Part shown: positions 19,839 through 55,767 of the stretch, in pieces
Layout: each line of letters starts with the position of its first letter
How positions within the stretch are numbered: position 1 is the stretch's first letter
IMG/VR virus record: IMGVR_UViG_3300017917_000952
Span: 142,752 to 206,751 of that record
Strand: one strand, 5' to 3'
DNA length: 64,000 nt
Position numbers and translations under genes: made by a program
The notes under the pieces: model-generated
Told to the model about the DNA's origin: nothing
What the model saw: only the letters and a program-made list of their open reading frames with translations
The model's database searches: none

Positions 19839-21053
19839 TTAATTATCCGCCCTTGGTTTTAGTGCCTTGCTTAGTGCCTGTCGTTCAGGAACAACCTTAC
19901 CTGAAATAGTTCCAGTATTTGTATTGTTAACAAATCCTGCTTTTTGTGTTTGCCTAATCGCAGCGCCTTCGAATGCCGTGCCTGGTGCAACATCTTGAGC
20001 ACCAAACTGGTTCATAGTCATTCTGACACCTTGCTCGTGCATTACCCAACGCTTGCCGTCATATTTGAACAATGCATTTGGCAGATAATCTGTTCTTAAA
20101 TAATATTGACCTTTAGCAGGATTACTAGGAAACTGAATTCCGGAACCAAATGGCGCACCATTAGGTGGAACACCATCACCGCCACCTAATCCAACATATA
20201 TCTTTTTGGTAGGCGTATTCAATACAAAACTTGCATCTACTTTAGCATCAACATCAATACTAGCATCGAGGTCCATGTTATCAGTTGCAGCAATATCAAC
20301 TAGGCCGCGATCATCTGTAGGAATAACAAATAAGTGTTTGTCAGTATAACCGCTTAATGGTGCATCTGCTTGTGCTTGCTCAATAATTTGATTGTTAATA
20401 TCGATACTCTTCTGATAAGTAGACAATAGATCCCGTAGAGTACTTCCGTCGCCCGCACCGCTGTCGGCATCAAGAATCTGTGCAAATTCCTGTGTATCAA
20501 CTAGAGGTTGACACTTAGCACGTAGTAAGTGAGGATACCATGTTTGACTAAAACCGTTAGCGGGTCTGCTCACATCAGTTACAACATAAAATCTTTTCAA
20601 TGCGACCTGTGCATCATCTAAGGCATACTCGTCCTTTAGATGCGGTAACTCAAATACATCGCCAGGCATAATTTTACGGCCGATAGTATCTACACAATTT
20701 CTTAAATGAAAATGCACCATGATGTTGTCATTATTAAGAAATAAACCAAACTGACTTAGGTTAAAATCTAAGTCCTGCATTTGATAGATACCTCTTAAAA
20801 CATACACATCTGGTTCATAAATTCTATCTCTGTTCTCCATAAACAATAAGTCCTGAATACCTACTTCGGGTATAGGGTTAGTGCTGTTATTAGGAGTGCT
20901 AGGAGTGCTTTCTCCTTCAGCAGGCGCTGTAGTACCTGCATATTTGTGAATAAAGATATCAGTTCCGCCGACCTGAAATTCTTCGTTAATTACACGGTCG
21001 AGAAACTTGAAATCATTGCCCTTTTCGGGACGGTAAAGAGAAAGTCTTGGCAT
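19839..21053 (-). CDS. Neck / head-closure protein (gp14-like)
   Basis: DLLFMENRDR.Y, LSQFGLF and PGDVFELPH motifs; divergent from the gp13-like gene. Confidence 0.55.
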   Translation of the reverse strand: MPRLSLYRPEKGNDFKFLDRVINEEFQVGGTDIFIHKYAGTTAPAEGESTPSTPNNSTNPIPEVGIQDLLFMENRDRIYEPDVYVLRGIYQMQDLDFNLSQFGLFLNNDNIMVHFHLRNCVDTIGRKIMPGDVFELPHLKDEYALDDAQVALKRFYVVTDVSRPANGFSQTWYPHLLRAKCQPLVDTQEFAQILDADSGAGDGSTLRDLLSTYQKSIDINNQIIEQAQADAPLSGYTDKHLFVIPTDDRGLVDIAATDNMDLDASIDVDAKVDASFVLNTPTKKIYVGLGGGDGVPPNGAPFGSGIQFPSNPAKGQYYLRTDYLPNALFKYDGKRWVMHEQGVRMTMNQFGAQDVAPGTAFEGAAIRQTQKAGFVNNTNTGTISGKVVPERQALSKALKPRADN

Positions 21054-21060
21054 AGTCTTG

Positions 21061-21077
21061 TATTTATTCGCTAAATA
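21061..21077. promoter_or_regulatory. Back-to-back divergent late promoters (TAAATA on each strand)
   Basis: Minus TAAATA 21061-66 lies 7 nt from the ATG at 21053; plus TAAATA 21072-77 lies 5 nt from the ATG at 21083. Confidence 0.7.
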
Positions 21078-21082
21078 GTGTT

Positions 21083-21841
21083 ATGACTGAGAACGAACTA
21101 GAACGCCAACGAGTTATTGACTATTGCAGAACTATGCTAGGTGATGGCATGGTTGATGTTGAGCTCGACCCTGCACATTACAACACTGCTATAGACAGAG
21201 CATTAGCAAAGTTTAGACAGCGTAGCAGCAACGCAGTAGAAGAAAGTTTCGGCTTTTTAACTATACAAGTTGACATAAACGAGTACGTTCTTCCAAAAGA
21301 AGTCATGAATGTGCGCCAACTTTTCCGTAGAAGTATTGGTAGCAGAAGCGGCGGCGGAGAAGGCGGTACGCTATTTGAACCGTTTAATCTAGCATATTCC
21401 AACACCTATTTGCTGGCCAGTTCTAACATGGGCGGCCTTGCAACTTATTATGCTTTTGCAAGTTATCAAAAGCAGGTAGGAAAGATGTTCGGTAGCGATA
21501 TTAATTTTACATTCAATAAAACTACAAAGGTCTTAACAATAATGCAGCGCCCCCGCGCTGAAGAAGAACTGTTGTTATGGATGTATAATCACAGGCCCGA
21601 CTTTAATCTTTTACAAGATCCTCAAGCAGGGCAATGGTTAAAAGACTACAGTCTTGCAACCTGCAAGTTAATGCTAGGCGAAGCCCGCGAAAAGTTCAAC
21701 AGTATTTCTAGCCCACAAGGCAGTACAAGTCTAAACGGTGCAGCACTCAAGGGAGAAGGCAAGGCCGAGCTCGAAGCACTAGAACAAGAATTGATCAACT
21801 ACAAAGACGGCGGAACCCCACTTACTTTTGTAATTGGATAA
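21083..21841 (+). CDS. Neck protein (gp13-like head-tail adaptor)
   Basis: YC...LG...VDVEL, WLKDYSLA..K..LG....KF and G..SLNG motifs of gp13. Confidence 0.75.
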   Translation: MTENELERQRVIDYCRTMLGDGMVDVELDPAHYNTAIDRALAKFRQRSSNAVEESFGFLTIQVDINEYVLPKEVMNVRQLFRRSIGSRSGGGEGGTLFEPFNLAYSNTYLLASSNMGGLATYYAFASYQKQVGKMFGSDINFTFNKTTKVLTIMQRPRAEEELLLWMYNHRPDFNLLQDPQAGQWLKDYSLATCKLMLGEAREKFNSISSPQGSTSLNGAALKGEGKAELEALEQELINYKDGGTPLTFVIG

Positions 21842-21843
21842 CA

Positions 21844-23293: not shown

Positions 23294-23625
23294 AAATCAG
23301 GGCGCAGGTCGCCCTGTTTCCATTTTATACCTTCCCGTTGTAGAGTACGTTGGCAGTTTGCACAGACTGTTTTGAGATTTGTAAAGCGACAATTCGTTAA
23401 ATTACCGTCTACGTGATAGACGTTGAACACTTCTTCATGCGGCGATTTCGCTCCGCACTTGTCGCAAATTTTCTTTTTTACATAACCTCTCAATGCCCAA
23501 AGAGGTTGCCCTTCTTCCCTATTTCTTGAGCAGTGGTCGCAGACAGACCTGTAGAACGGCTTGCCTTCTTTGTAGTAATTAATAGCCACTGGTCTTTTTT
23601 GACATTTTTTACATAGTTTACGCAT
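23290..23625 (-). CDS. Zn-finger / HNH-like protein
   Basis: Several CxxC pairs and HVDGNL.N....NL.TVCANC; start reassigned to MRKLC. Confidence 0.7.
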   Translation of the reverse strand: MRKLCKKCQKRPVAINYYKEGKPFYRSVCDHCSRNREEGQPLWALRGYVKKKICDKCGAKSPHEEVFNVYHVDGNLTNCRFTNLKTVCANCQRTLQREGIKWKQGDLRPDF

Positions 23626-23688: not shown

Positions 23689-23718
23689 TAAATATATCAA
23701 AGTGAATCCTTTAAGGAG
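23689..23718 (+). promoter_or_regulatory. Late promoter TAAATA plus TAAGGAG RBS for the tail sheath gene
   Basis: CTAAATA, then a short leader with a strong RBS. Confidence 0.6.
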
Positions 23719-23724
23719 TTTAAT

Positions 23725-26700
23725 ATGGCAACATTACAATCACCAGGCGTAAGCGTATCAGTTATAGATGAGAGTTTCTATACACCCGCAGGCGCCGGTA
23801 CAGTTCCGATGATCTTCGTAGCAACTGGTCAAGATAAACCAAATGCATCCGGAACTGGCATAGCGCAGGGAACAACAGCAGCGAACGCTGGTAAAGTTTG
23901 GGTAATTACAAGTCAACGTGACTTGTCCGATACATTCGGTGTACCTTACTTTGAAACAGATTCAAGTGGCAACCCTGTACACGGCGGAGAACTAAACGAA
24001 TACGGTCTACAAGCCGCATACAGCGCACTTGGAGTTAGTTCCAAGGCTTACATCGTTAGAGCAGACATTAACACTTCTGAACTAGCACCTAACCCTTCTA
24101 TTCCTGGCGGTACTCCTGTTAACGGAACATACTGGGTAGTTACTTCAAACACAGATTTCGGTATCAACGAGTGGAACGCAAGCACTAAGCGTTTCGTTAC
24201 TAAGACTCCTTTAATCATTGATAACACAAACGTTGAGCTAGATTTTGATCACCAGGCTGTTAGCCCAGCAGGTACAATAGGTCTACCAAGAACAGCGTTT
24301 GGAACTGTTGGCGACTACGCAGTTTTAGTAACCAGCGACAACGGTACCCAACACCCAGAAGGTGTATACTTCAAGTCTCCTACAAATGGATGGGTAGATG
24401 TGTTAGACGGATTTGACGGAGGTAAGGTTGTTAGACTAAGCGAACACTTTAATTATCCTAACTACACAAACGCAGGTCCTGGCGCACTAAATGCACCTAC
24501 AGGCAGCGTTTGGATCAAGACTACTGCACCGGGCATGGGCGCAAACTGGGACATTAGAAAGTACAATGCAAGCACAGACAACTGGGATCGTGTAAGTGCT
24601 CCTCTATATCCAAGCACACAGGCTGCACTAGCAGACCTAGACGGTGTAGGTGGTGGATCAAACATTCCATTAGGATCTGTATTTGTACAGTACGATCCAC
24701 AAGAAACAAACATGGCAGATTTCAGAAAGTGGATTCGTTATAAGTCCGGTCCTACTTCTGTATCAGTCGAAAGCGACTTCGTAGCCTCAGGAAACTGGGC
24801 ATTTGACCTTGTAGAAACTGACGAATTTGGTAACAAGAGTTCCACTGCCACATTCTCTGGTGTTGCATCTCCTGTTGTTTTAGTACAGAAAATTGCTGAA
24901 GCAATTAACAGTAACCTAAACCTAAAGTACACTAAGGCAAGCCATAACACTGTTACAAACAAACTAACTATTACACATAGTTTAGGTGGCGACATTCTAT
25001 TTGCAAATACCGTTGGTCAGCCTTTAGTTGATATCGGATTTGTAGGTGGCAACGTTCCTGAAATCGAAGGCAACATTGCAAACCTATATACCTACAGCGG
25101 CGCATATTGGGACGTCCTTGCTTCTAACTGGAAACCTCTAGTCTACGAAGCACAGGAAACTGCACCAACTACAGCACCAGATGATGGCCAACTATGGTTC
25201 GACAGTGACCTATCCGCAGACATCATGTACAATGATGGGCTACAGTGGGTTGGTTACCTAAACGCATTCCCAGGATCCGATCCAAAAGGTCCTACAATCA
25301 GCGCAACCAAGCCAACTACACAACAAGACGGTGTTACACCTTTAGTTGACGGTGATATTTGGATTGACACTAGCGATCCAGACAAGTACGGTAGAAACAT
25401 TTATGTTTACAATAGCGGTGCTTGGGAAATGGCTGACGTAACCGATCAATCTAGCCCAGACGGTTGGGTATTTGAAGACGCACGTTGGTCCGTCAACGGT
25501 GAAACTGACCTAAGAGCAGATATCGAGGACCTATTACTAAGTGACTATGTTGATCCTGATTGTCCAGATCCACGCCTATATCCACGTGGCACACGACTAT
25601 TCAACACACGCCGTAGCGGTAACAACGTCAAGCGTTATTTTGCAAACTACATCGATCCAGATGTAGAAAATACACGTTATAATGACGAAGGTATGGCCGG
25701 TTACTTCCTAGGTCGCTGGGTAAGTGCAAGTCCAAATGCACCAGACGGTGCAGGCCAGTTTGGTCGTCTTGCACAGCGTAGTGTAGTTGTTAAGGCTCTA
25801 AAAGAAGAAATTGCAAGCAATACTACAATTAGAGATACTGATACACTAGTATTCAACTTGATTACTACCCCAGGTTACCCTGAAGTAATTCAGAACATGG
25901 TTGCATTTAACATTGACCGAGGCTTAACAGCGTTTGTCATTGGTGATACACCATTCCGTCTACCAGCAACTGGAACAGCATTAACAAACTACGGTATGAA
26001 CACCGCAGGTGTTGTTGACAACAACGACGAAGGTGCTGTTACATACGATACTAGCCTAGCAATGTACTACCCAAGCGGTTATACAAATGACAACCTAGGC
26101 AATGCTATTGTTGTTCCGCCAAGTCACGTTATGCTACGTACATATCTAAACAGCGACAACAAGAGCTATCTATGGTTTGCACCAGCAGGTACACGTCGAG
26201 GTGTTGCTGACAACGTAAGTAGTGTAGGTTACATTACTGGCGAGGGCGAATTCCAGACTGCAAGTCTACACCAAGGACTACGCGATGTTTGTGCAGGTGT
26301 TAAGATTAACCCAATCGCAACAATTCCAGGTGTTGGCATTGTTACCATGGGTCAGTACACTCGTGCAAGCGTAGCCAGCGCATTAGATCGAGTTAACGTA
26401 AGTCGTTTAATTGCTCACCTACGTAGACAACTTTCTATCCTTGCTAAACCATACTTGTTTGAACCAAACGATTCTCAAACAAGACAAGAAATCAAGGCAG
26501 CATGTGATGCTCTAATGACAGAATTAGTAAGTCAACGTGCTCTATACGACTTCTTGGTTGTCTGTGACGGAACAAACAACACACCGGCAAGAATTGATCG
26601 TAGCGAACTATGGGTTGATATCGCTATCGAACCAGTGAAGGCTGTAGAGTTTATCTACATTCCTTTACGTATATTGAACACCGGTGAAATATCCGCATAA
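23725..26700 (+). CDS. Contractile tail sheath protein (gp18-like) with large insertion domains
   Basis: N-terminal SPGVSV...DES; C-terminal WFAPAG..RG, INPI, DRVNV.RL, FEPND, NTP..ID, EFIYIP. Confidence 0.92.
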   Translation: MATLQSPGVSVSVIDESFYTPAGAGTVPMIFVATGQDKPNASGTGIAQGTTAANAGKVWVITSQRDLSDTFGVPYFETDSSGNPVHGGELNEYGLQAAYSALGVSSKAYIVRADINTSELAPNPSIPGGTPVNGTYWVVTSNTDFGINEWNASTKRFVTKTPLIIDNTNVELDFDHQAVSPAGTIGLPRTAFGTVGDYAVLVTSDNGTQHPEGVYFKSPTNGWVDVLDGFDGGKVVRLSEHFNYPNYTNAGPGALNAPTGSVWIKTTAPGMGANWDIRKYNASTDNWDRVSAPLYPSTQAALADLDGVGGGSNIPLGSVFVQYDPQETNMADFRKWIRYKSGPTSVSVESDFVASGNWAFDLVETDEFGNKSSTATFSGVASPVVLVQKIAEAINSNLNLKYTKASHNTVTNKLTITHSLGGDILFANTVGQPLVDIGFVGGNVPEIEGNIANLYTYSGAYWDVLASNWKPLVYEAQETAPTTAPDDGQLWFDSDLSADIMYNDGLQWVGYLNAFPGSDPKGPTISATKPTTQQDGVTPLVDGDIWIDTSDPDKYGRNIYVYNSGAWEMADVTDQSSPDGWVFEDARWSVNGETDLRADIEDLLLSDYVDPDCPDPRLYPRGTRLFNTRRSGNNVKRYFANYIDPDVENTRYNDEGMAGYFLGRWVSASPNAPDGAGQFGRLAQRSVVVKALKEEIASNTTIRDTDTLVFNLITTPGYPEVIQNMVAFNIDRGLTAFVIGDTPFRLPATGTALTNYGMNTAGVVDNNDEGAVTYDTSLAMYYPSGYTNDNLGNAIVVPPSHVMLRTYLNSDNKSYLWFAPAGTRRGVADNVSSVGYITGEGEFQTASLHQGLRDVCAGVKINPIATIPGVGIVTMGQYTRASVASALDRVNVSRLIAHLRRQLSILAKPYLFEPNDSQTRQEIKAACDALMTELVSQRALYDFLVVCDGTNNTPARIDRSELWVDIAIEPVKAVEFIYIPLRILNTGEISA

Positions 26701-27353: not shown

Positions 27354-27371
27354 TCCAACACTAACACAAAG

Positions 27372-27398
27372 AAAGCCCGGCAAACACCGGGCTTTTTT
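27372..27398 (+). terminator. Intrinsic terminator
   Basis: AAAGCCCGG-caaaca-CCGGGCTTTTTT. Confidence 0.85.
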
Positions 27399-27415
27399 AT
27401 TGGATAAATAATTTC

Positions 27416-28447
27416 ATGTCAGACGCATTTAATAATTTCTTGAGTGGTGGCCCTACTACCTCAACTGAAAAACGAACATATAAAAGTTACGCTCATGCGA
27501 CTAACTTTTATGCTCAAGGTAGAGCCCTCACGAAAGTACCTAAATTAGGGTTTATATATTTTATATCCTTTAATTTAGCACAAGAAGTAGGAGTAAAATT
27601 TGCAGATCACGTTAGAAAAGATTTGGGGTTCCTTGCTAAGAAAGTTGATCTTCCTAAGTTTAAGATTACTACACAAACCGTTAATCAGTACAACAGAAAA
27701 ACCAACGTCCAGACAAAACTAGCATATGACCCGATTAGTATCGACTTTCATGATGATACTAGCGAGATAACTTCAGCATTATGGAGAGCCTACTACGACT
27801 TTTATTATGCTGACGGTCGACAACCCGACGGACAATTTAGTACAGCATTTTCGGGCGATACTAAACTTGATTCTACAAACAATTCGTATGGTTACAGCAA
27901 AGGTAGTGGCCCAACTTCTTTCTTTAGTTCTATAGATATTTTTGTATTAAATCAAGGCAGATTTAGTCAATACAGTATTTCTAATCCGTTAATTACTTCT
28001 TGGGACCACGATACATTAGAGCAGTCTAACGGTACAAAAGTTCTTCAAAACAAGATGTCTTTAACCTACGACAGTGTTGTGTATTCACAGGGATTCATTA
28101 GGGGTAGCGAGAATCAAGCAGTTACTGGATCGTTCGAAGCCGTCTGGTACGATAAGGATGCTAACCTACCTTTCGGTTATAACGATCCTCTAAAACAGGT
28201 AATCAAACCATTTGTACCACAATACCCTACACCGTCCCCGCCGGGTCTGTCACAGAGCCAACTTGACAAACTATCAACTCAGGTCCCAACATATAGACCA
28301 CCGAGACCAATTGGCGCAGGAACATTTGGCCTTTCGTCTATTAGACCACCTAAGCCATTTAGCATTGATGTATGGTACGGTTATGGCGGATTACACGGCC
28401 GAGCAACTGTAAATGCGGGGCCTGTAAGACTTGTATTAAAGAAATAA
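27416..28447 (+). CDS. Tail-tube-like / baseplate-tube junction protein
   Basis: KVDLPK, NQYNRK, Y.PI.I.FHDD and M.L.YD tube-fold signature. Confidence 0.6.
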   Translation: MSDAFNNFLSGGPTTSTEKRTYKSYAHATNFYAQGRALTKVPKLGFIYFISFNLAQEVGVKFADHVRKDLGFLAKKVDLPKFKITTQTVNQYNRKTNVQTKLAYDPISIDFHDDTSEITSALWRAYYDFYYADGRQPDGQFSTAFSGDTKLDSTNNSYGYSKGSGPTSFFSSIDIFVLNQGRFSQYSISNPLITSWDHDTLEQSNGTKVLQNKMSLTYDSVVYSQGFIRGSENQAVTGSFEAVWYDKDANLPFGYNDPLKQVIKPFVPQYPTPSPPGLSQSQLDKLSTQVPTYRPPRPIGAGTFGLSSIRPPKPFSIDVWYGYGGLHGRATVNAGPVRLVLKK

Positions 28448-28805: not shown

Positions 28806-29245
28806 GTTTAAAATACGCTAAGGGCGTGTATCAATTGCGCCACCCCGAAAAATATATAGGAACAAAACAGCCTATCTATCGCAGCGGATGGGAACACACA
28901 TTTATGATGTTCTGCGATAACAATCCCGGTATACAGGAATGGGCTAGTGAGCCGGTCAAAATACCTTACAGAGATCCGCTAACAGGACGACAGACAGTAT
29001 ATGTTCCTGATTTCTTAATTAAGTACATTGATCGCAATCAAAAAGCACATGTTGAAATGGTTGAAATTAAACCGGCAAAACAACAGATCCTAGAAAAAGT
29101 TGGTAAAAATCCCTATGATCAAGCACAGTACGTAAAGAACATGGCCAAATGGGAAAGTGCAACGGCTTGGTGTAGAAGCAGAGGTATTCGCTTTCGTGTA
29201 ATTAATGAGTCTGATATTTTCCAGAATCAAGGTAAAAAGCGATAA
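28802..29245 (+). CDS. Head completion nuclease (T4 gp4 / TnsA-N-like)
   Basis: P.KY.G, YRSGWE..FM.FCD.N, W.SE...IPY, YVPDF and EIKP motifs. Confidence 0.88.
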   Translation: MSLKYAKGVYQLRHPEKYIGTKQPIYRSGWEHTFMMFCDNNPGIQEWASEPVKIPYRDPLTGRQTVYVPDFLIKYIDRNQKAHVEMVEIKPAKQQILEKVGKNPYDQAQYVKNMAKWESATAWCRSRGIRFRVINESDIFQNQGKKR

Positions 29246-29253
29246 GTAAAGTT

Positions 29254-29730
29254 ATGACTAAAAAGTTAGAAGAAGTTTTTAACCTGCCACAAGAACCCGT
29301 AATCGAGCCTTCTGTTGAAGATACTACTGCACCTATTCCTGTAATAGACCTTCAAGAAAAACTAGAAGAATTTGATAAGATTGCAGCAGCACTACCTAAG
29401 GTAAAGGGGTTAGGGGATCTAGCCGATGCAGAGTTAGATGCACTAGCAGCGAAAGCAGAAGAAGCCTATGACAACTTAATGGATTTAGGCATGAACGTAG
29501 ATGCACGATATGGTGCAAGAATGTTCGAAGTTGCAGCACAGATGATGAATGCCGCAATTGTTGCTAAAACTAATAAGATTGATAAAAAGTTAAAAATGGT
29601 CGATCTGCAATTAAAGAAACTAGCCATTGATAAGAAAAACGGCGGATCTAACGAAACTGTTGAGGGTGAAGGTTATATCCTAACAGATAGGAATAGCATC
29701 CTAGAAAAACTAAAGAATTTGAATAAATAA
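29254..29730 (+). CDS. Putative terminase small subunit
   Basis: Helical protein with R.FEVA..M and a C-terminal DRN.IL..L; upstream of the large terminase. Confidence 0.5.
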   Translation: MTKKLEEVFNLPQEPVIEPSVEDTTAPIPVIDLQEKLEEFDKIAAALPKVKGLGDLADAELDALAAKAEEAYDNLMDLGMNVDARYGARMFEVAAQMMNAAIVAKTNKIDKKLKMVDLQLKKLAIDKKNGGSNETVEGEGYILTDRNSILEKLKNLNK

Positions 29731-29736
29731 TACACT

Positions 29737-30330
29737 ATGAAAAACTTCAAAGAATACCTTCAAGAAAGTGCTCAGCAGAAAAAATACGAATTTCGTGTTA
29801 AGGTTGCTGGTGACTTTACTACCGAGCAAGAGACAAAGTTAAAGTCTATGCTTGAGCGTTTTCAAGTTAACGCATTTAAAAAAGTAGGAGTTACTCCTAT
29901 TCAAGCACTTCCATTAGACTTTCCGCAAGTTAAAAATTGTGAAGTTAACATCTACGAAGTTACATTAGATTATCCTACTACACAGCAGGAACTAACAGAA
30001 TACTTAACATCTGGTCTAGAAGTCAGCAAGCAACGTTTAGTTGTTCGTCGACCAGGTGAACCGAGTGAAGAATACCAACACGAAGAACCAAAGCGTGAAG
30101 GTGCTCTATTAAACGATCCGGATTATAAAGAAGCAGGTAACCCTCAATTTGAAGATTACTTTGGCGACAAATATAACAGCGGCTTTGTGAAAGAACTTAA
30201 CGATCTATTAAAACTAGAGCGTAAGGCACGTGGCGAAGAAATTCCTACAGAAAGTGCTGCTAAGTTCAATACAGATAGTCCGGCTAACACAACTAGCCCA
30301 ATGCAGGCTGCTAAGGATCCAAGGAAATAA
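29737..30330 (+). CDS. Hypothetical head-associated protein
   Basis: MK.FKEYL.E N-terminus resembles T4-like prohead-protease-cleaved head proteins. Confidence 0.5.
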   Translation: MKNFKEYLQESAQQKKYEFRVKVAGDFTTEQETKLKSMLERFQVNAFKKVGVTPIQALPLDFPQVKNCEVNIYEVTLDYPTTQQELTEYLTSGLEVSKQRLVVRRPGEPSEEYQHEEPKREGALLNDPDYKEAGNPQFEDYFGDKYNSGFVKELNDLLKLERKARGEEIPTESAAKFNTDSPANTTSPMQAAKDPRK

Positions 30331-31198: not shown

Positions 31199-31225
31199 AA
31201 TAGCCCCTTCGGGGGCTATTCTTTT
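31199..31225 (+). terminator. Intrinsic terminator with C(UUCG)G tetraloop
   Basis: AATAGCCCC-TTCG-GGGGCTATT-CTTTT. Confidence 0.88.
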
Positions 31226-31239
31226 CAGTAAATACGGAT

Positions 31240-32817: not shown

Positions 32818-32831
32818 CTAAATAACATATT

Positions 32832-37271: not shown

Positions 37272-37727
37272 ATGTCCTGGTATGCTAAAGTCTCTAAGGA
37301 CATAGCACACCTTCCCGGTTGTTTAGATCACTTTTACACAGAGTTAGAATCAGCAAGATCAGAGGTCAAAATCTACGGAAACGTAGAGAAGGCCTCTGCC
37401 TTGCTTCCTGGCATTGTAGAGCATAGATTTAATCAACTCCAGGAAATTGAGGCTATCCTAGAATATCTCAACATTGAACTGAGAAGAATCAAATCTAAGG
37501 CATTTAAAAAATACTTAGAAAATTATCAACGGGCATTGAGCAGTCGAGATTGTGAAAAATACGTTGAAGGAGAGGCAGATGTTGTTGATATGGAAAAAAT
37601 TATCAACGAATTTGCTATGTTGCGTAACCAATGGTTAGGAATCATTAAAGGTTTGGATATCAAGCAGTGGCAATTGAGTAACATCATCAAATTAAGAGCC
37701 GCCGGTCTTGAAGATATTTCACTTTGA
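37272..37727 (+). CDS. uvsY: Recombination mediator UvsY-like
   Basis: Helical protein with YVEGE.D and K.WQL.NI.KL..AG; position after uvsX. Confidence 0.7.
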   Translation: MSWYAKVSKDIAHLPGCLDHFYTELESARSEVKIYGNVEKASALLPGIVEHRFNQLQEIEAILEYLNIELRRIKSKAFKKYLENYQRALSSRDCEKYVEGEADVVDMEKIINEFAMLRNQWLGIIKGLDIKQWQLSNIIKLRAAGLEDISL

Positions 37728-37736
37728 GTGTATAAT
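37708..37736 (+). promoter_or_regulatory. Sigma70 promoter giving a leaderless mRNA
   Basis: TTGAAG-17-TATAAT-6-ATG(37743). Confidence 0.6.
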
Positions 37737-37742
37737 ATTGCT

Positions 37743-46018: not shown

Positions 46019-46037
46019 TGTTCGATAAATACTCTAT

Positions 46038-46877
46038 ATGCAAAGTTTACCAATCTATTTATATTCTAACACACTCGATGTTACATTAGATTTGGACCCT
46101 ACAGTCAGAGGAGTTAATCGAGTTATGTATCAACGCGACCTAAAAGTACAAAAAGGTATCAAGAATAAAATCCGAATTCAGTTTAAAAATAGCGATCAAA
46201 AAAGAATTACTATTAGTCAAGATGATGTTTATGTTTTTTCCTTGTTCGATACGACAAACCAACGACTATTGATAGAAAAGCAATTAACTATTTTAGATGA
46301 CGGTACAACTTTAGCAACTCGCGGTTTGGCAGAACTTGTATTAACAGAAAGCGATACCCTGAATCTTGATGTAAGCGATTATCAGTTTAGCATCAAGAAA
46401 CAAGATACAGACGGTACATATCTTCCTGCATATAGTAATACATATTACGGCGTAGCCGGTTTCTTAAAAGTAGCTCAGGATGTTTATCCAATGTTACAGC
46501 CAAGTCAAGAAGTTGTATCTTTTGAGCCAGTATATGATGATATTATTCAAAAGTATCAATATAGAAGCGGTAACATTTATGCTTACCCAGAATACAACAG
46601 TAACACCGCATTACATACCGCAGCCGCATATCTAACCAACTATAAAGGTACGCTTAAAATTGAAGGCACATTATATAACACACCTTCTAACTTTAATAGG
46701 TATGTAACTATTGCAACCAAAACTTACAGTAACTTTAGCGGTATTGATTATTTCAATTTTAACGGAATATTCAGTTACGTAAGATTTACCTTCATTCCGG
46801 ACACTGCACCCGGAGAATCAAATAATAATAATCCAGAATACTACGGAAGTTTTGACAAAGTACTCTATAGATGCTAA
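46038..46877 (+). CDS. Hypothetical (probably late/structural) protein
   Basis: 279 aa; TAAATA 6 nt before the ATG. Confidence 0.6.
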   Translation: MQSLPIYLYSNTLDVTLDLDPTVRGVNRVMYQRDLKVQKGIKNKIRIQFKNSDQKRITISQDDVYVFSLFDTTNQRLLIEKQLTILDDGTTLATRGLAELVLTESDTLNLDVSDYQFSIKKQDTDGTYLPAYSNTYYGVAGFLKVAQDVYPMLQPSQEVVSFEPVYDDIIQKYQYRSGNIYAYPEYNSNTALHTAAAYLTNYKGTLKIEGTLYNTPSNFNRYVTIATKTYSNFSGIDYFNFNGIFSYVRFTFIPDTAPGESNNNNPEYYGSFDKVLYRC

Positions 46878-50875: not shown

Positions 50876-51410
50876 TTCTGTGTTTGGCGGCCCTGTCTAA
50901 GGCCAAACGCCATTGGTCCGGACCTTCGCCGTCAAACACGCTTTCTAATGTCGCTGGTGCAACTTCCCATTTAAATTCATCGTGTTCTCTAGGATCTAGC
51001 ATTCTGTCTAGACGTCCATCTTCCCACAACCAATACCCTGCACAGGCTCTGTAAAATTCTGGGCCTTCGCCTCGAGCAATTGCGGCCAGCACACTTATAT
51101 CGTTAGTAACACTGATCTCGTCGCTCATTTTAACTGTGGTCATTCCTTTCCAGTCGTTGCTATGTACTACGTGAATTTTGTTAGTTGCAACATTTCCGCC
51201 GAACCACAAGGGTGCCGAAACTGGAAATTCCATACCTAAGTTTGCTGCTACTGTTTGCAGATCAATATCGTCTAAGGGATTATTAACCTGCAGGCCAATG
51301 GCTAGATTATCTGTATGATTGACACACAGTAACACGCTCTTAGATAACTCATCTCTGGGATTGTTAGGATTTGCTACCAAGAGATATCCGGGGTATTTTT
51401 TCTTTGTCAT
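50859..51410 (-). CDS. YqgE/AlgH (DUF179) family protein
   Basis: G.LLVA.P, SV.L...H....A.GL.VN.P, W.GG.V, GY..W..G.L motifs. Confidence 0.8.
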   Translation of the reverse strand: MTKKKYPGYLLVANPNNPRDELSKSVLLCVNHTDNLAIGLQVNNPLDDIDLQTVAANLGMEFPVSAPLWFGGNVATNKIHVVHSNDWKGMTTVKMSDEISVTNDISVLAAIARGEGPEFYRACAGYWLWEDGRLDRMLDPREHDEFKWEVAPATLESVFDGEGPDQWRLALDRAAKHRISAWF

Positions 51411-51417
51411 ACCTTTT

Positions 51418-51434
51418 TATTTACCGTATAAATA
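51418..51434. promoter_or_regulatory. Back-to-back divergent late promoters
   Basis: Minus TAAATA 51418-23 lies 7 nt from the ATG at 51410; plus TATAAATA 51427-34 lies 6 nt from the ATG at 51441. Confidence 0.7.
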
Positions 51435-51440
51435 TATGGT

Positions 51441-52136
51441 ATGATTCAAAAAGAGTATGCAGCCCCTATTAACCATAACACAGTGCTAAATCCTGTGCTA
51501 TGGGATCACGATCGCCTAAAACCAGAAGTCCGCGGCGCACTGCTACGCATGGCTGAAGATTTTATTGATTTTGTAGATATACCTTTTGACATTAAGGACA
51601 TAATCATTACTGGGGGCAATGTTAACTTTACCTATACTAAAGACAGTGATATTGACCTACACATTGTTGCAGACTTCAATACTGTAAAATGTGATAGAGA
51701 AGTTGCTGAACTCTTTGACACCAAACGTCTACTCTACAAAAGACAGCATCGTCTCGAAATACACGGTGTGCCTGTAGAATTATACATTGAAGACCACAGA
51801 ACTCCGGGTGTTACCGCAGGGATGTTCAGTGTGGCACAGGATGAGTGGTTGAAGCGTCCTAGTAAGGTCATACCAAAATATGACCATGTTGAATTAGACC
51901 GTCAAGTAGCACTTTGGACAAAAATCCTACAACGTGCGATCATGACAGGGGATTTACAAATCTGCAGAAAGGCACTAAAATTGTTACGAGTCTATCGTAA
52001 GAAAGGTCTGAGCACACCTGCAGGCGAGTTTAGTATTCCAAACTTAGTCTACAAGAGTCTACGTAACGATCAAGTAATTGACAGTATGGCTCGATTAATA
52101 GATAGACTTCACGGTCAAGAATTAAGCATAAGATAA
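51441..52136 (+). CDS. Pol-beta superfamily nucleotidyltransferase-like protein
   Basis: ITGG...F.Y...SDIDLH and VELY motifs. Confidence 0.7.
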   Translation: MIQKEYAAPINHNTVLNPVLWDHDRLKPEVRGALLRMAEDFIDFVDIPFDIKDIIITGGNVNFTYTKDSDIDLHIVADFNTVKCDREVAELFDTKRLLYKRQHRLEIHGVPVELYIEDHRTPGVTAGMFSVAQDEWLKRPSKVIPKYDHVELDRQVALWTKILQRAIMTGDLQICRKALKLLRVYRKKGLSTPAGEFSIPNLVYKSLRNDQVIDSMARLIDRLHGQELSIR

Positions 52137-52689: not shown

Positions 52690-53314
52690 CAGCATATTTC
52701 TCTATCAAGAATTGATAGAGGTCATTGTTCGTAAATCCAACACTGAAACTAGTACGCTTAGTCTGTATAGGTTATACGCTGTGCAGTAGGTCTGTTCGAA
52801 AAATTGCCCACGAACCTGCTTCAAATTCGACTTCCTCTAACAGCGTCATGTCCTTATGGGATGTTGTGCAGATCATAGGTGTAGGTCTTTCTACGCCATG
52901 CCCTTTTTCCTGCCACCAGGATGTTTTTACGCCCTGGCCGCCAGTATTCCACAGTGCCTGTATACAGTGTTTACCACGACGTTCTCCATCGGTGTGTGTT
53001 AACATCATTGCACCCATAGGATCTGCATCCTGATTGTAGATCTTCTGATACCCCCAATCTCTAACATGGGGTCTAAGTTCAGGCATCATGGCTAACAGAT
53101 ATTCTAGGATATCGGTGCCTAGCCTATAGCGTTGATATCGTGCAAGACTGTGGCGTTTACCGTGCTGACCGATAGCACCTGTACGTCTAAGCCATTCGTT
53201 GCGTAGATATCCGCGATCATCTCCCTGATTATCAAATATAACTTCCCCTAGTTGACTTTCGCTAGGTTCAGGGTAATCTATTTTAGGCAAATCGAGCAGA
53301 GTGTGATATTTCAT
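52679..53314 (-). pseudogene. 2OG-Fe(II) oxygenase-like gene interrupted by an in-frame TAA at 52772-52774
   Basis: HTD...H metal triad; the frame continues after the stop as PIQTKRTSFSVGF... to a TAG at 52679; start MKYH lies 7 nt after TAAATA. Confidence 0.55.
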
Positions 53315-53333
53315 TGTAGGGTATTTACAGTAC

Positions 53334-53588
53334 TCAACTACCCCATTTGAGCAAAAACAGAGTTTGGTGCTTTTCTCGGGCAAAACTCACAGCACAAAGG
53401 TCTGTTTGATGCAGTGTCCAAGTACTCCAAACCCACTGTACATAGTGAGGACCTACGGCCTGTTCTAGCCAATTTTCCACGGTATGTATGCTTTCAATCC
53501 AGTCGGGTTGACCCTTGTATTCAACCAATGGCCAAGGAACAGCCGCTGTATAGGGCAGAGTCCACGGGTGATCGCAGAGTGCTCTCAT
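53334..53588 (-). CDS. Hypothetical protein
   Basis: Start reassigned to MRALC (TAAATA 5 nt upstream); C-terminal F....TLFLLKW motif. Confidence 0.6.
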   Translation of the reverse strand: MRALCDHPWTLPYTAAVPWPLVEYKGQPDWIESIHTVENWLEQAVGPHYVQWVWSTWTLHQTDLCAVSFAREKHQTLFLLKWGS

Positions 53589-53643
53589 ACATTTATTTAC
53601 TGTCTTTCTTGTATAAATAACTGACAAGGGAGCAAAGAAACCT

Positions 53644-53913
53644 ATGAACTACACTCTACGAATTTGGACCAACGGAGACGGCGACTACTACGACAGTGAT
53701 TTCGCGACCTTGGATGAACTATACAACAGCATTTTTGAAAACTGGGATCCGGAGGGTGTTGTACCCTTAACAGTACGTGCGGGTGTTACGCTACAGAGCG
53801 GCTACGCAGTCTACGATAATGCTACAGGACTCTGCATTAACAGTATCAATGCAGCACAGGTCGGACTAGACAAGACAGCACCATTCCAACAGTTTGGTCC
53901 TGCTACAATTTAA
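53644..53913 (+). CDS. Hypothetical protein
   Basis: TATAAATA at 53612-19, GGGAG RBS and its own terminator. Confidence 0.65.
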   Translation: MNYTLRIWTNGDGDYYDSDFATLDELYNSIFENWDPEGVVPLTVRAGVTLQSGYAVYDNATGLCINSINAAQVGLDKTAPFQQFGPATI

Positions 53914-53965: not shown

Positions 53966-54249
53966 GGCCAAGGCAGCATCTGTGGCCATACTGGGTTCGT
54001 AGAAATAGGCCGAGGCTGCGTCGGTCATGTGCTGACAGCAAGCGTCATGGTGCGGACAGGGCTGTTCAGTGGAGTAGATCTGCCCGTCGATGAGTAGACA
54101 GAACGAGGGTCGTATCCCTTCTGGTACAGGGCAGAACTGTTTAGGCATACTGTGTCTCCGGATACTCAATCCAGCAGTAGCACTCAAGTAGTAGATCGTC
54201 AAATAAGTAGTACATAGTAGAAATATTTACAAATAAGACCATAGAGCCA

Positions 54250-54927
54250 ATGAAAAATAGAATCGTAGCCATTACAGTTAGCACCAATTATCACGACATA
54301 CTGCCCTACAGTCTAAAGAACAATCTAGATCTGTTTGATCATTGGTATATAGCCACGGACAAGAACGACTGGCGTACAGGAAACGCCATAGCACATCACG
54401 ATCAGGACCGTATTACCACAGTACACTATCCATTTACTAGCACATTTACCGATCCTGTGCGCGGTGAACTACAGACACGCTGGTTTGACAAGGGCGGAGC
54501 AATTAGAACGCTACAGGAGCGGGCCTACAGGGAATTCCCCGATCATTGGTACCTAGTTCTAGATACGGACATACTCTTACGCAACAGCCGTGACCTAAAT
54601 ACCAGTAATCTCTGCCCTGATTACCTATATGGCCCGCAATGCCGATTAGACTACCGCAGCCTCAGTGATTACCACACAGGCACAGTAGCACACGAATACT
54701 TTCACGGCAACCCACGTATTATAGGCTTCTTCCAACTGTACAAACAGCATAGGTTTTACCAGCAGAGCCTGGACACAAACTGGTGCGATGATGAGTTTAC
54801 ACAGCAGTGGAAACCCAATGAACAGCGTTTCCTACCCATTACTGTGGATCACCTAGGCGCTTGGGATCAGGGCACACCCAATACACATAGAGGCAGAATT
54901 CCAGGGCAGGGATTCCGGAACCAGTAG
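54250..54927 (+). CDS. Glycosyltransferase-like protein (GT-A)
   Basis: ITVS.NY.D.L, FDKG and LVLDTDI (DxD) motifs. Confidence 0.65.
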   Translation: MKNRIVAITVSTNYHDILPYSLKNNLDLFDHWYIATDKNDWRTGNAIAHHDQDRITTVHYPFTSTFTDPVRGELQTRWFDKGGAIRTLQERAYREFPDHWYLVLDTDILLRNSRDLNTSNLCPDYLYGPQCRLDYRSLSDYHTGTVAHEYFHGNPRIIGFFQLYKQHRFYQQSLDTNWCDDEFTQQWKPNEQRFLPITVDHLGAWDQGTPNTHRGRIPGQGFRNQ

Positions 54928-54952
54928 GCCCAAGGACGGCGAAGCCGCCAGC

Positions 54953-54970
54953 GGTAAAAAATTTTTTACC
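54953..54970. repeat. Perfect 18-bp palindrome GGTAAAAAATTTTTTACC between convergent genes
   Basis: Read directly from the sequence. Confidence 0.8.
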
Positions 54971-55733
54971 CTACATTAAAACCCAACTTAACCAAATCTC
55001 TAACTATATAGTCCTGTGTCCAATGCAGCAGCGTCTCCGGCCCAGGATGATAAGCGCCTGACAGGCCTAGATCACGAGCCTGATCACGTACACAGCCCCA
55101 AGCCCTAATACGCCCCCAATCCTCAGGTCCATAGTTATAAGCATAGTAGTGTAGAGTTGGACAGCCCAGCATTGAATCCACGCTAAGGGCATAATAGTCT
55201 AATAATGCACGACTGTGAGTCTCGTTAACTGCATACTGAGCAGCCAAAGGGTTTAAGTGACAGTTCCAAGGTCCCCAACTGTCCACACTGTCTGAATCCT
55301 TAAACACACTGAGTCTGTGTACTCCGGGCCATAGATATACAGCGGCTAGTGGCTTGATACCATAACTAGCAATACGAACAGTGTTAGCCCACTGAAAAAG
55401 ATCGTCCGTAGCACCCTGTCCTAGATTTACTACTGGAATGCCCGTAATACGCTGTAACTGGCTACTCATAGTATCACCGTCGTCAACTCCGGGTGCAAAC
55501 TGATAACTACAGCCAAACATAACAATGCTGTTAGCCCAGTCTATACTATCGAACTCTGGACAGCGATAGCCCTGACTGTTTACAGTGTAGCGAACTGTAC
55601 GATCGCGCCACGGCCAGTCTGAGCTCTGCACCCGTAGATTATGCTCGTATAATTCCCTACTGTCCGTACCGTAGAAGAATGGTGGTTCATGTTGGAGTCC
55701 GTGCCAGTGACTAGATAATAACTGTAAGCTCAT
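54966..55733 (-). CDS. Hypothetical protein, SGNH-hydrolase-like
   Basis: NSQGYR, FGCS, NLG..G and D...HPG motifs; TAAATA 6 nt before the ATG. Confidence 0.6.
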   Translation of the reverse strand: MSLQLLSSHWHGLQHEPPFFYGTDSRELYEHNLRVQSSDWPWRDRTVRYTVNSQGYRCPEFDSIDWANSIVMFGCSYQFAPGVDDGDTMSSQLQRITGIPVVNLGQGATDDLFQWANTVRIASYGIKPLAAVYLWPGVHRLSVFKDSDSVDSWGPWNCHLNPLAAQYAVNETHSRALLDYYALSVDSMLGCPTLHYYAYNYGPEDWGRIRAWGCVRDQARDLGLSGAYHPGPETLLHWTQDYIVRDLVKLGFNVG

Positions 55734-55767
55734 ATACTCTATTTACGAGTATAGCGGAGCCAGAGAC

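What the first reader, a model, noticed from the sequence alone, without database searches (positions are those of the whole stretch)
21051..55745. Pervasive leaderless late transcripts: TAAATA-N5-7-ATG with no RBS
Seen: a TAAATA box 5-7 nt before the start codon, leaving no room for an RBS, at 21053(-), 21083, 27416, 29254 (TAAGTA variant), 29737, 31240 (terminase), 32832, 46038, 51410(-), 51441, 53314(-), 53588(-) and 55733(-). Established: T4 late promoters (TATAAATA, gp55 sigma) initiate about 6 nt downstream of the box, which here puts +1 at or within about 2 nt of the ATG. High-copy sheath and tube genes instead have leaders with AAGGAG. Inference: leaderless versus SD-led initiation sets late-protein stoichiometry, on a scale unusual for T4-type phages.
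Basis: partly seen in the sequence, partly recalled or inferred. Interest (0 to 1): 0.78.

Follow-up and report, generated by a model that had tools for sequence, protein, structure and literature searches.

The report
Leaderless late genes in jumbo phage
In an uncultured giant T4-like phage from pond water, about half of the late-gene promoter boxes sit 5-7 bases from the start codon, so the messages probably begin at the AUG with no ribosome-binding site; this layout is conserved gene by gene in its relatives and is absent from T4 and the cultured giant relatives checked.

Summary
TAAATA is depleted in the window (29 sites against about 62 expected). Yet 12 sites lie exactly 5-7 nt before the ATG of a long ORF, against 1.3-3.3 expected. 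A thirteenth site is a conserved TAAGTA variant.

In about 160 related metagenomic loci the box is near-invariant before the same genes, including adaptor, tube-like protein, TerL and several virion proteins. The spacer varies freely and no Shine-Dalgarno motif is present. Sheath, tube, major capsid, SSB, UvsX and UvsY are always SD-led.

When the box lies 14-45 nt upstream, an SD usually fills the gap. Box-proximal starts are about 98% ATG, with a pyrimidine at -1 in 97%. Two boxes directly follow terminators, and two back-to-back pairs fill 29-30 bp intergenic gaps.

The same contig encodes a gp55-family late sigma factor. T4 numbering (box at -13 to -6) puts +1 on the A of ATG at the modal spacing of 5. 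T4, 121Q, PA5oct and GAP32-type loci have leadered late genes instead.

No RNA data were listed, so 5' ends are inferred. The stoichiometry idea fits the data but is untested.

The parts
21051..21066 (-). Box 21061-21066, 7-nt spacer, ATG 21053. Gene is a 404-aa virion structural protein. Left half of a back-to-back divergent pair.
   Evidence: Box at 7 nt in 9 of 11 orthologous upstream regions.
21072..21085 (+). Box 21072-21077, 5-nt spacer, ATG 21083. Gene is the head-tail adaptor. The intergenic gap to 21053 is only 29 bp.
   Evidence: Box at 4-8 nt in 18 of 18 orthologs, with no SD.
27369..27418 (+). Terminator hairpin and U-run (27369-27401), then box 27405-27410, 5-nt spacer, ATG 27416. 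Gene is a 343-aa tube-like protein.
   Evidence: Hairpin -18.6 kcal/mol, z = -5.4. Box-proximal in 41 of 41 orthologs, with the terminator also conserved.
29243..29256 (+). TAAGTA variant box 29243-29248, 5-nt spacer, ATG 29254. Gene is a small-terminase-like protein of 158 aa.
   Evidence: A one-mismatch variant is conserved at this spacing in 40 of 49 orthologs.
29724..29739 (+). Box 29724-29729 overlapping the upstream stop codon, 7-nt spacer, ATG 29737. Gene is a 197-aa virion protein.
   Evidence: Box-proximal in 32 of 41 orthologs; in the other 9 the box lies further upstream.
31199..31242 (+). Terminator hairpin 31199-31220, then box 31229-31234, 5-nt spacer, ATG 31240. Gene is the large terminase.
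   Evidence: Box-proximal in 56 of 57 orthologs with a variable spacer.
32819..32834 (+). Box 32819-32824, 7-nt spacer, ATG 32832. Gene is a 661-aa virion structural protein.
   Evidence: Box-proximal in 55 of 56 orthologs.
46026..46040 (+). Box 46026-46031, 6-nt spacer, ATG 46038. Gene is a 279-aa virion structural protein.
   Evidence: Box-proximal in 69 of 69 orthologs, with no SD.
51408..51423 (-). Box 51418-51423, 7-nt spacer, ATG 51410. Gene is an AlgH-like DUF179 protein. Left half of a back-to-back pair.
   Evidence: Box-proximal in 48 of 59 orthologs.
51429..51443 (+). Box 51429-51434, 6-nt spacer, ATG 51441. Gene is a 231-aa protein in phrog_36119. The intergenic gap is 30 bp.
   Evidence: Box-proximal in 43 of 44 orthologs.
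53312..53327 (-). Box 53322-53327, 7-nt spacer, ATG 53314. Gene is a 180-aa ORF of unknown function.
   Evidence: No family hit and no ortholog found, so this is the weakest member.
53586..53599 (-). Box 53594-53599, 5-nt spacer, ATG 53588. Gene is an 84-aa ORF.
   Evidence: Box-proximal in 10 of 13 orthologs.
55731..55745 (-). Box 55740-55745, 6-nt spacer, ATG 55733. Gene is a 255-aa ORF of unknown function.
   Evidence: The single ortholog found also has the box.
23689..23727 (+). Leadered counterpart: box 23689-23694, 30-nt leader containing AAGGAG, ATG 23725. Gene is the tail sheath. The tube gene at 26715 follows with its own AAGGAG.
   Evidence: Sheath orthologs have an SD in 37 of 37 and a box at 12-39 nt in 34 of 37. 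Tube orthologs have an SD in 44 of 44.
53614..53646 (+). Leadered box: 53614-53619, 24-nt leader with an AAGGGAG-type SD, ATG 53644. Diverges from the 53588(-) unit.
16687..16710 (+). Leadered box: 16687-16692, 15-nt leader with AAGGAG, GTG 16708 (66-aa ORF).
37708..37745 (+). Sigma-70-type promoter (TTGAAG, 17 nt, TATAAT) followed after 6 nt by ATG 37743. This is the likely true start of the 390-aa gene after UvsY, and a leaderless layout on a non-late promoter.
   Evidence: The -10 hexamer and the 6-7 nt spacing are conserved in many relatives.
59969..60006 (-). Consensus sigma-70-type promoter (TTGACA, 17 nt, TATAAT) followed after 6 nt by ATG 59971 (114-aa ORF), in the GC-richer end region.

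Best explanation
TAAATA is the core of a T4-type late promoter: a -10-like box with no -35 element. It is read by host RNA polymerase carrying the phage's own gp55-family sigma factor. In this phage clade, roughly half of the late promoters sit so that the last A of the box is 5-7 nt from the start codon. By T4 geometry, transcription then starts on the A of ATG, or at most about 3 nt upstream. These late mRNAs therefore have no leader and no Shine-Dalgarno sequence. They would have to be initiated through their 5'-terminal AUG, by the 70S/IF2-type leaderless pathway. Other late genes (sheath, tube, major capsid, fibre) keep the same box 15-45 nt upstream, or are co-transcribed, and carry a strong AAGGAG.

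Shown here: the motif, its spacing, its gene-by-gene conservation, the absence of SD, the ATG and pyrimidine(-1) signatures, the depletion of the box elsewhere, the abutting terminators, and the sigma gene.

Inferred: the exact 5' ends, the use of the leaderless translation route, and the idea that the two modes set low versus high protein output.
For: 1. Spacing. Counts in the window peak sharply at 5-7 nt, with 12 observed against 1.3-3.3 expected. Across the window plus 80 TerL-anchored loci, 310 of 903 boxes (34%) lie 4-7 nt before the ATG of an ORF of at least 80 aa, with a mode of 200 at 5 nt. Unrelated AT-rich hexamers give 0.2-3%.

2. SD dichotomy. An SD-like 4-mer is present in 2 of 263 box-proximal sites, against 111 of 161 sites where the box is 14-45 nt upstream.

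3. Gene-specific conservation across TerL identities of 63-92%. Box-proximal: adaptor 18/18, tube-like 41/41, TerL 56/57, g32832 55/56, g46038 69/69, g51441 43/44, AlgH-like 48/59. SD-led: sheath 37/37, tube 44/44, SSB 43/43, UvsY 36/36. The box is fixed while the spacer varies.

4. DNA-level signal. TAAATA is the rarest of the 15 A4T2 hexamers inside genes in both orientations, at 8 sense and 8 antisense, against 14-83 and 26-53 for the others.

5. No room for another promoter. Terminator hairpins end 4-8 nt before the boxes at 27405 and 31229. Back-to-back boxes fill 29-30 bp divergent gaps.

6. Start-site and leaderless signatures. The base before the ATG is a pyrimidine in 97% of box-proximal genes, against 54% of SD-led genes. 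Start codons are ATG in 266 cases against 4 GTG/TTG, compared with 402 against 75 for SD-led ORFs.

7. Sigma factor. A 305-aa gp55-family protein lies on the same contig. It matches phrog_12791 at E = 4.5e-85 and the T4 gp55 family phrog_234 at 4e-26, and hhalign gives 100% probability against Rak2/Atu_ph07 sigmas. It sits in the conserved position next to gp47 and gp46, and has a sigma-70-type promoter of its own.

8. Geometry. The T4 box spans -13 to -6 (PMC2988020; bases at -12, -9 and -8 are flipped into gp55 pockets, PMC7892883).
Against: - No transcript 5' end has been observed, and no RNA run holding this sequence was listed.
- At 7-nt sites, spacer position 5 is A in 98% of cases. Initiation there would leave a 3-nt leader rather than none.
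- Counts across loci are phylogenetically non-independent. They represent about 12 orthologous sites seen many times.
- Gene starts come from ORF logic and tblastn, not from proteomics.
- The first two positions of the T4 octamer are not conserved here.
- gp33 and gp45 homologs were not found in the 90 kb examined (one search covers gp45 only, at low sensitivity).
- The host is unknown, so its capacity for leaderless translation is unknown.
Confidence: 0.8

Rival explanations
1. TAAATA is an RNA-level translation signal. It would replace the Shine-Dalgarno sequence at the usual 5-7 nt distance on polycistronic late mRNAs, for example as an A/U-rich enhancer or a site for a phage factor. It would not be a promoter.
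For: The 5-7 nt spacing matches the usual SD-to-AUG spacing. Several boxes lie in very short junctions within same-strand gene rows, such as 29724 and 32819. Many non-late genes in this phage also lack a clear SD.
Against: - The same hexamer is conserved 12-39 nt upstream of the sheath gene with a canonical SD in between, in 34 of 37 orthologs.
- It is depleted inside genes on the antisense strand as much as on the sense strand.
- It follows terminators and sits in 29-30 bp divergent gaps, where no upstream same-strand mRNA is expected.
- It matches the core of the T4 late promoter, and a gp55-family sigma is encoded on the contig.
- Relatives use the box with long leaders.
Confidence: 0.05
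2. The boxes are late promoters, but the proteins start at downstream codons or the polymerase starts elsewhere. The mRNAs would then have ordinary leaders, and the proximity to the first ATG would be incidental to compact gene packing.
For: 46038 has an in-frame ATG at codon 29 preceded by an AGGAGG-like SD. Two ORFs (53314, 53588) have alternative upstream TTG codons.
Against: - Twelve of the 13 genes have no downstream in-frame start with an SD within 40 codons.
- The ATG and the second codon are conserved directly after the variable spacer.
- Near-exclusive ATG usage and a pyrimidine at -1 are unexplained by incidental proximity.
- T4 and other compact relatives do not show the peak.
Confidence: 0.07
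3. TAAATA marks an endoribonuclease processing site that trims longer transcripts to short-leader or leaderless mRNAs.
For: A/U-rich sites are typical RNase targets. Primer-extension 5' ends at T4 late boxes cannot by themselves separate initiation from processing, a caveat stated in PMC2988020.
Against: The antisense-strand depletion, the boxes after terminators and in divergent gaps, the homology with gp55-type promoters, and the presence of the sigma factor all argue against it.
Confidence: 0.03
4. The pattern is a chance product of AT-rich intergenic sequence.
For: The window is 40-45% GC, and intergenic regions are AT-rich.
Against: Shuffles never reach the observed count. Control hexamers of the same composition show no peak. 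The box is invariant over many diverged orthologous sites while the neighbouring bases vary.
Confidence: 0.01

Closest known systems
Bacteriophage T4 late promoters (TATAAATA, read by gp55 with gp33 and the gp45 sliding clamp)
   Same: - It is a -10-like A/T box with no -35 element, lying before virion genes on either strand.
- The segment downstream of the box is AT-rich.
- A gp55-family sigma is encoded by the phage, with T4 residues N13 and Y97 conserved in the alignment.
- The six-base core TAAATA is identical.
   Different: - The first two bases of the octamer are not conserved here. A precedent is Aeh1, with a/gC at -13/-12 (PMC2988020).
- The sigma is 305 aa, with a roughly 150-aa insertion relative to gp55.
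- In the T4 late region, the 25 box-to-start distances found within 150 nt are all 9 nt or more and cluster at 21-28 nt. Here about half are 4-7 nt.
- gp33 and gp45 homologs were not identified.
Predicted late motif ATAAATA of Rak2-like jumbo phages (CBB, GAP32) and their gp55-like sigma (PMC5259590)
   Same: The gene order is the same: adaptor, dNMP kinase, sheath, tube, TerL, UvsX, primase, helicase. The long gp55-like sigma lies next to gp47/gp46 in both. The box core precedes structural genes in both.
   Different: In 121Q, PA5oct and GAP32/CBB-type loci the box lies about 25-50 nt upstream, with an SD in the leader. Box-proximal starts number 2 of 98 boxes in Rak2-type loci and none in the 121Q stretch.
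Thermus phages phiYS40 and Lalka27a, where most transcripts are leaderless (bioRxiv 10.64898/2026.04.20.719267, citing Sevostyanova et al. 2007)
   Same: The same working principle applies on a genome-wide scale. A -10-type element directly abuts the ORF, so the first transcribed base is the A or G of the start codon.
   Different: - The phage lineage, promoter consensus and transcription factors are unrelated.
- The host phylum, Deinococcus-Thermus, itself uses this layout commonly (PMC12340547).
- In those phages the 5' ends were mapped; here they are inferred.
- Here only a defined subset of genes is leaderless, and the rest are strongly SD-led.
Lambda cI mRNA from PRM, the classic leaderless mRNA of an enterobacterial phage (own knowledge)
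   Same: Transcription starts at the A of AUG. There is no SD, and AUG is required.
   Different: That is a single regulatory gene, not a conserved class of a dozen or more late genes per 90 kb.

Membership tests
T4-type (gp55-dependent) late promoter | A -10-like A/T box, TATAAATA, at about -13 to -6 | tested here: met
   The core TAAATA (T4 positions -11 to -6) is invariant at conserved sites. The two 5' bases of the octamer are not conserved, as in the Aeh1 variant noted in PMC2988020.
T4-type (gp55-dependent) late promoter | No conserved -35 element | tested here: met
   The position matrix of 263 box-proximal and 161 leadered sites shows no conserved upstream hexamer, only T-runs from terminators. 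Intergenic gaps of 29-30 bp leave no room for one.
T4-type (gp55-dependent) late promoter | A gp55-family sigma factor encoded by the same genome | tested here: met
   L171:5985-6902 lies on the window's own contig. It matches phrog_12791 at E = 4.5e-85 and phrog_234 at 4e-26, and hhalign gives 100% probability.
T4-type (gp55-dependent) late promoter | Precedes late (virion and packaging) genes and is absent from replication genes | tested here: met
   Box-led genes are the adaptor, tube-like protein, terminases, virion proteins, sheath and fibre. The SSB-UvsX-helicase block at 34950-45654 has no gene-associated box. Exceptions are the AlgH-like gene and unknown small ORFs.
T4-type (gp55-dependent) late promoter | Co-activator gp33 and sliding clamp gp45 | tested here: inconclusive
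   tblastn with T4 gp45 found nothing in the window or the TerL loci. gp33 was not searched. Only 90 of 207 kb of the contig were read. The CBB authors also found neither protein (PMC5259590).
T4-type (gp55-dependent) late promoter | Transcription starts about 6 nt after the box | not testable with these tools
   No RNA run was listed for this sequence.
Leaderless mRNA | The transcript 5' end is at the start codon, with a 5' UTR of 0 to a few nt | not testable with these tools
   This is inferred from the T4 geometry and the pyrimidine(-1)/A(+1) signature. No RNA data are available.
Leaderless mRNA | No Shine-Dalgarno sequence upstream of the start | tested here: met
   An SD-like 4-mer is present in 2 of 263 sites, against 111 of 161 leadered sites. 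Per gene, the count is 0 in the adaptor, tube-like, TerL, g46038 and g51441 orthologs.
Leaderless mRNA | Strict use of AUG as the start codon | tested here: met
   There are 266 ATG against 4 GTG/TTG first starts, compared with 402 against 75 in SD-led ORFs. The SD-led control set may contain some spurious ORFs.
Leaderless mRNA | A promoter -10 element directly adjacent to the ORF | tested here: met
   The modal spacing is 5 nt for the gp55-type box and 6-7 nt for two sigma-70-type -10 hexamers.

The most novel reading that the evidence does not exclude
The leaderless layout could be a translation-level control circuit of this phage clade, not just compact packing. In this reading, late in infection the phage or its host shifts initiation towards 5'-terminal AUGs, for example by changing the IF2/IF3 balance or the ribosome. 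A fixed set of low-copy virion, packaging and accessory genes would then be expressed by a route host mRNAs cannot use, while the SD-led structural genes supply bulk protein. The conserved gene-by-gene assignment to one mode or the other would be the genetic record of that circuit.
Probability: 0.15. Interest if true: 0.85.

Novelty: new variant of a known kind. Interest (0 to 1): 0.62.

Why it matters
T4-type late transcription and leaderless translation are each well known. Their systematic combination was not found in the literature searched: no paper in the held library links leaderless mRNAs to T4-like or Rak2-like late genes.

If it is real, it has four consequences:
- It gives a rule for annotating starts and promoters in a widespread group of aquatic jumbo phages. 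More than 130 TerL relatives and about 600 helicase relatives were found in IMG/VR.
- It provides a natural paired set of leaderless and SD-led genes under one promoter type, suitable for measuring how initiation mode sets protein output.
- It hints that the unknown host translates 5'-terminal AUGs well.
- It shows that leader length can be lost clade-wide while the promoter core stays fixed.

Tried and rejected
- RNA evidence. The look-up of sequencing runs with kind 'any' listed only DNA metagenomes, and kind 'rna' listed none.
- Close relatives. No near-identical record exists in the phage or E. coli collections.
- Sigma factor in the held sequence. T4 gp55 and Atu_ph07 gp694 found nothing in the window or the TerL loci by tblastn or phmmer.
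- Sigma factor by IMG/VR scan. A scan with a sigma alignment returned 80 loci, none on a contig from the TerL list. Box statistics in those loci were uninformative. The sigma gene was found instead by walking up the source contig.
- Orthologs of 51441. A single-protein scan with 51441-52136 found only the window's own contig. The helicase gene was used as the anchor instead.
- Unknown box-led ORFs. Pfam and PHROGs scans found no sigma-like protein in the window.
- Known RNA elements. Rfam and tRNA scans of the window were empty.
- ORF-definition artefact. I considered that the peak arises because the box contains TAA. I rejected this because of the frame argument and the control hexamers.
- Bacteroidota-type host. 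I rejected this because early promoters are TTGACA/TATAAT-like and SD motifs are strictly conserved before high-copy genes.

Full report
WHAT THE WINDOW IS

The window is the last 64 kb of a 206,751-bp contig from a pond metagenome. The contig is JGI 3300017917 Ga0192394_132242, also IMGVR_UViG_3300017917_000952, and window position 1 is record position 142,752. It has no near-identical match among deposited phages or E. coli genomes.

Its large terminase is distantly similar at the DNA level to those of PA5oct, Atu_ph07 and 121Q. The gene order matches these Rak2-like and PA5oct-like jumbo myoviruses: virion protein, head-tail adaptor, dNMP kinase, sheath, tube, tube-like protein, head closure, small and large terminase, virion protein, SSB, UvsX, UvsY, helicases, virion protein, primase, DnaB-like helicase.

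THE OBSERVATION

TAAATA is strongly under-represented in the window, at 29 sites against 62.9 +/- 9.0 in shuffles. Yet 12 sites are followed at 5-7 nt by an ATG that opens a long ORF. The expectation is 3.3 +/- 1.8 from shuffles, or 1.3 given only 29 boxes. No box has an ATG at 9-16 nt.

In 90.5 kb of the contig (the window plus 26.5 kb read upstream), 14 of 46 boxes lie 4-7 nt from a start, 12 lie 15-53 nt from one, and 20 are not gene-associated.

The peak is not produced by the TAA inside the box. At spacings 5 and 7 that TAA is out of frame, and other TAA-containing hexamers show no peak.

CONSERVATION

Eighty IMG/VR loci anchored on TerL (63-92% amino-acid identity) and 80 anchored on the DnaB-like helicase were compared.

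Upstream of TerL, nearly every locus has a terminator hairpin and T-run, two variable bases, an invariant TAAATA, 4-6 variable bases, and then ATG.

The layout is a property of the gene:

| Gene | Box at 4-8 nt (unique orthologous upstream sequences) |
|---|---|
| Adaptor | 18/18 |
| Tube-like protein (27416) | 41/41 |
| TerL | 56/57 |
| g32832 | 55/56 |
| g29737 | 32/41 |
| g19839(-) | 9/11 |
| g46038 | 69/69 |
| AlgH-like gene (50859, -) | 48/59 |
| g51441 | 43/44 |
| g53588(-) | 10/13 |

The TAAGTA variant before the small-terminase-like gene is itself conserved, in 40 of 49 orthologs.

In contrast, the following genes carry an SD and never a proximal box:
- sheath (SD in 37/37)
- tube (44/44)
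- SSB (43/43)
- UvsY (36/36)
- UvsX (34/41)
- dNMP kinase (31/36)
- g30333 (28/29)

The sheath keeps the box 12-39 nt upstream in 34 of 37 orthologs.

Over all TerL-anchored loci plus the window, 34% of 903 boxes lie 4-7 nt before a long-ORF ATG, with the mode at 5 nt. Unrelated AT-rich hexamers give 0.2-3%.

PROMOTER OR RIBOSOME SIGNAL?

Five lines of evidence point to a DNA-level promoter.

1. When the box is 14-45 nt from the ATG, an SD-like 4-mer lies in the gap in 111 of 161 unique sites. When it is 4-8 nt away, only 2 of 263 have one. The box is therefore separable from ribosome positioning.

2. Inside genes, TAAATA is the rarest of all 15 A4T2 hexamers on both strands. It occurs 8 times in sense and 8 in antisense, against 14-83 and 26-53 for the others. 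Antisense avoidance makes sense for a minimal promoter, but not for an mRNA signal.

3. Stable hairpins with U-runs end a few bases before the boxes at 27405 and 31229, and before one upstream of the window at L167:4027. A transcript for the next gene must therefore start in the roughly 15 nt that remain.

4. The divergent pairs 21053(-)/21083(+) and 51410(-)/51441(+) have 29-30 bp between their ATGs. Two back-to-back boxes fill that gap, and the arrangement is conserved in relatives.

5. Both leadered and box-proximal sites avoid G in the two positions after the box and are A/T-rich there. T4 late promoters show the same property (PMC2988020).

THE SIGMA FACTOR

Nothing resembling gp55 is in the window.

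Walking up the source contig reached the arrangement seen in GAP32 and Atu_ph07: baseplate genes on one strand, then a sigma gene followed by gp47-like and gp46-like genes on the other.

The 305-aa protein at L171:5985-6902 is at record positions 122,255-123,172, about 20 kb before the window. It matches phrog_12791 ('sigma factor for late transcription') at E = 4.5e-85 and the T4 gp55 family phrog_234 at 4e-26. It aligns to the Rak2/Atu_ph07 sigmas with 100% hhalign probability.

In a five-way alignment, T4 residues N13 and Y97, which contact flipped promoter bases, are invariant. H95 is F in the long sigmas (PMC7892883).

The sigma gene has its own TTGACA-17-TATACT promoter. This fits expression by unmodified host polymerase before late transcription begins.

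WHERE TRANSCRIPTION WOULD START

In T4 the octamer occupies -13 to -6 (PMC2988020; PMC7892883 describes flipped bases at -12, -9 and -8). With the last A at -6, five bases follow before +1. The modal spacing here is exactly 5 nt, which puts +1 on the A of ATG.

The base before the ATG varies with spacing:
- At spacing 5 it is T in 84% and C in 14% of sites.
- At spacing 6 it is T in 100%.
- Overall it is a pyrimidine in 97% of box-proximal genes, against 54% of SD-led genes. This is the usual pyrimidine(-1)/purine(+1) preference of start sites.
- At spacing 7 the spacer ends in A-Y-T, with the A at 98%. A start 3 nt upstream of the ATG is therefore possible at those sites.

Box-proximal starts are ATG in 266 cases against 4 GTG or TTG. 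SD-led ORFs are ATG in 402 against 75. This fits the known requirement of leaderless translation for AUG (own knowledge; the AR9 paper PMC5312081 cites Brock et al. 2008 on recognition of the 5'-terminal AUG).

Only one of the 13 genes, 46038, has a downstream in-frame ATG with an SD, and its proximal ATG is conserved in all relatives.

IS THE SCALE UNUSUAL?

It is. In 50 kb of the T4 late region, the 25 box-to-annotated-start distances found within 150 nt are all 9 nt or more, and most are 21-28 nt.

In 121Q and PA5oct, orthologous genes have the box 25-50 nt upstream with SD leaders. In Rak2-type loci only 2 of 98 boxes are start-proximal.

Published TSS maps found no leaderless transcripts for the phiKZ early genes, and 5' UTRs of 26-491 nt for AR9 (PMC8244752, PMC5312081). 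PA5oct promoter calls were sigma-70-like only (PMC7318152).

The closest working analogues are the Thermus phages phiYS40 and Lalka27a, where most mapped transcripts are leaderless (bioRxiv 10.64898/2026.04.20.719267). Their host phylum commonly places the -10 element next to ORFs (PMC12340547).

THE STOICHIOMETRY INFERENCE

The split fits the idea. SD-led genes are the major capsid protein and its neighbours, sheath, tube and the large fibre, along with the abundant DNA-binding proteins. Box-proximal genes are connector, terminase, minor virion and accessory genes.

This is a correlation over roughly 25 genes, and the host's efficiency on leaderless mRNAs is unknown. I treat it as plausible but untested.

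The layout is also not restricted to late promoters:
- A conserved TTGAAG-17-TATAAT element lies 6 nt before ATG 37743. This also corrects the GTG 37728 start given by the longest-ORF rule.
- A consensus TTGACA-17-TATAAT element lies 6 nt before ATG 59971(-).

These suggest that the host translates 5'-terminal AUGs from the beginning of infection.

VERDICT

The promoter reading is strongly supported, and the leaderless reading is well supported, though indirectly. The sigma factor check came back positive. This is a new variant of known mechanisms: a T4-type late promoter fused to the start codon, conserved across a large uncultured clade. The main open points are the missing 5'-end data, the unknown host, and the untested link to protein dosage.

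Noticed in passing
window 37708-37745 (+): A sigma-70-type promoter (TTGAAG, 17 nt, TATAAT) lies 6 nt before ATG 37743. The longest-ORF start GTG 37728 is probably wrong. This is a leaderless layout on a non-late gene, the 390-aa gene between UvsY and the helicase. It is conserved in many relatives.
   Followed up: yes
window 59969-60006 (-): A perfect TTGACA-17-TATAAT promoter lies 6 nt before ATG 59971 (114-aa ORF). This is a second sigma-70-type leaderless candidate, in the GC-richer end region.
   Followed up: partly
window 56000-64000: GC rises from about 0.40 to 0.51-0.53, and no TAAATA occurs beyond 55745. The region holds small ORFs, with only two PHROG hits: a 293-aa AAA+-like phrog_1250 at 56515-57396(-) and phrog_4973 at 61824-62162(-). 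It is the end of the contig. It may be an early-gene block or an assembly join.
   Followed up: partly
window 34851-34895 (+): A TAAATA box is followed immediately by a strong terminator hairpin (-15.5 kcal/mol, z = -6.2) in the gap between the virion gene and the SSB gene. A promoter firing into a terminator would give only a very short RNA. It may be chance or a regulatory device.
   Followed up: partly
window 45635-46061 (-): Gene 45635-46018(-) has its box 37 nt upstream, inside the divergent gene 46038. The leader has no SD-like motif. The box is conserved at 12-39 nt in 60 of 68 relatives.
   Followed up: partly
window 46886-52689 and 40362-45095: Many non-late genes (primase, helicase, deoxyribonucleotidase, g41575, g44298) have neither a box nor an SD-like 4-mer in most relatives. 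SD dependence in this phage and host therefore looks selective rather than general.
   Followed up: no
L171:5985-6902 (same contig, about 20 kb before the window): The gp55-family sigma is 305 aa. It has a roughly 150-aa insertion after the first helix relative to T4 gp55, shared with the Rak2-like and Atu_ph07 sigmas. T4 H95 is replaced by F, while N13 and Y97 are kept.
   Followed up: partly
window 49328-51410: A B12-binding radical SAM protein (49328-50875) and an AlgH-like DUF179 protein (50859-51410, minus strand, box-led) are encoded among phage replication and virion genes.
   Followed up: no
window 9085-16647 (+): A 2520-aa fibre protein has a C-terminal Peptidase_S74-type domain. It is preceded by an 1804-aa fibre gene that starts upstream of the window and has a box plus an SD leader.
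   Followed up: no
window 23290-23663 (-): An HNH endonuclease-like ORF lies between the dNMP kinase and sheath genes. It has its own TAAATA box 32 nt upstream, on the strand opposite to its neighbours.
   Followed up: no
L057-L059 (TerL 68-69% identity): In this sub-branch the box before TerL has decayed to TCAAAC, with the terminator and spacing kept. The next gene retains TAAATA-N5-ATG.
   Followed up: partly
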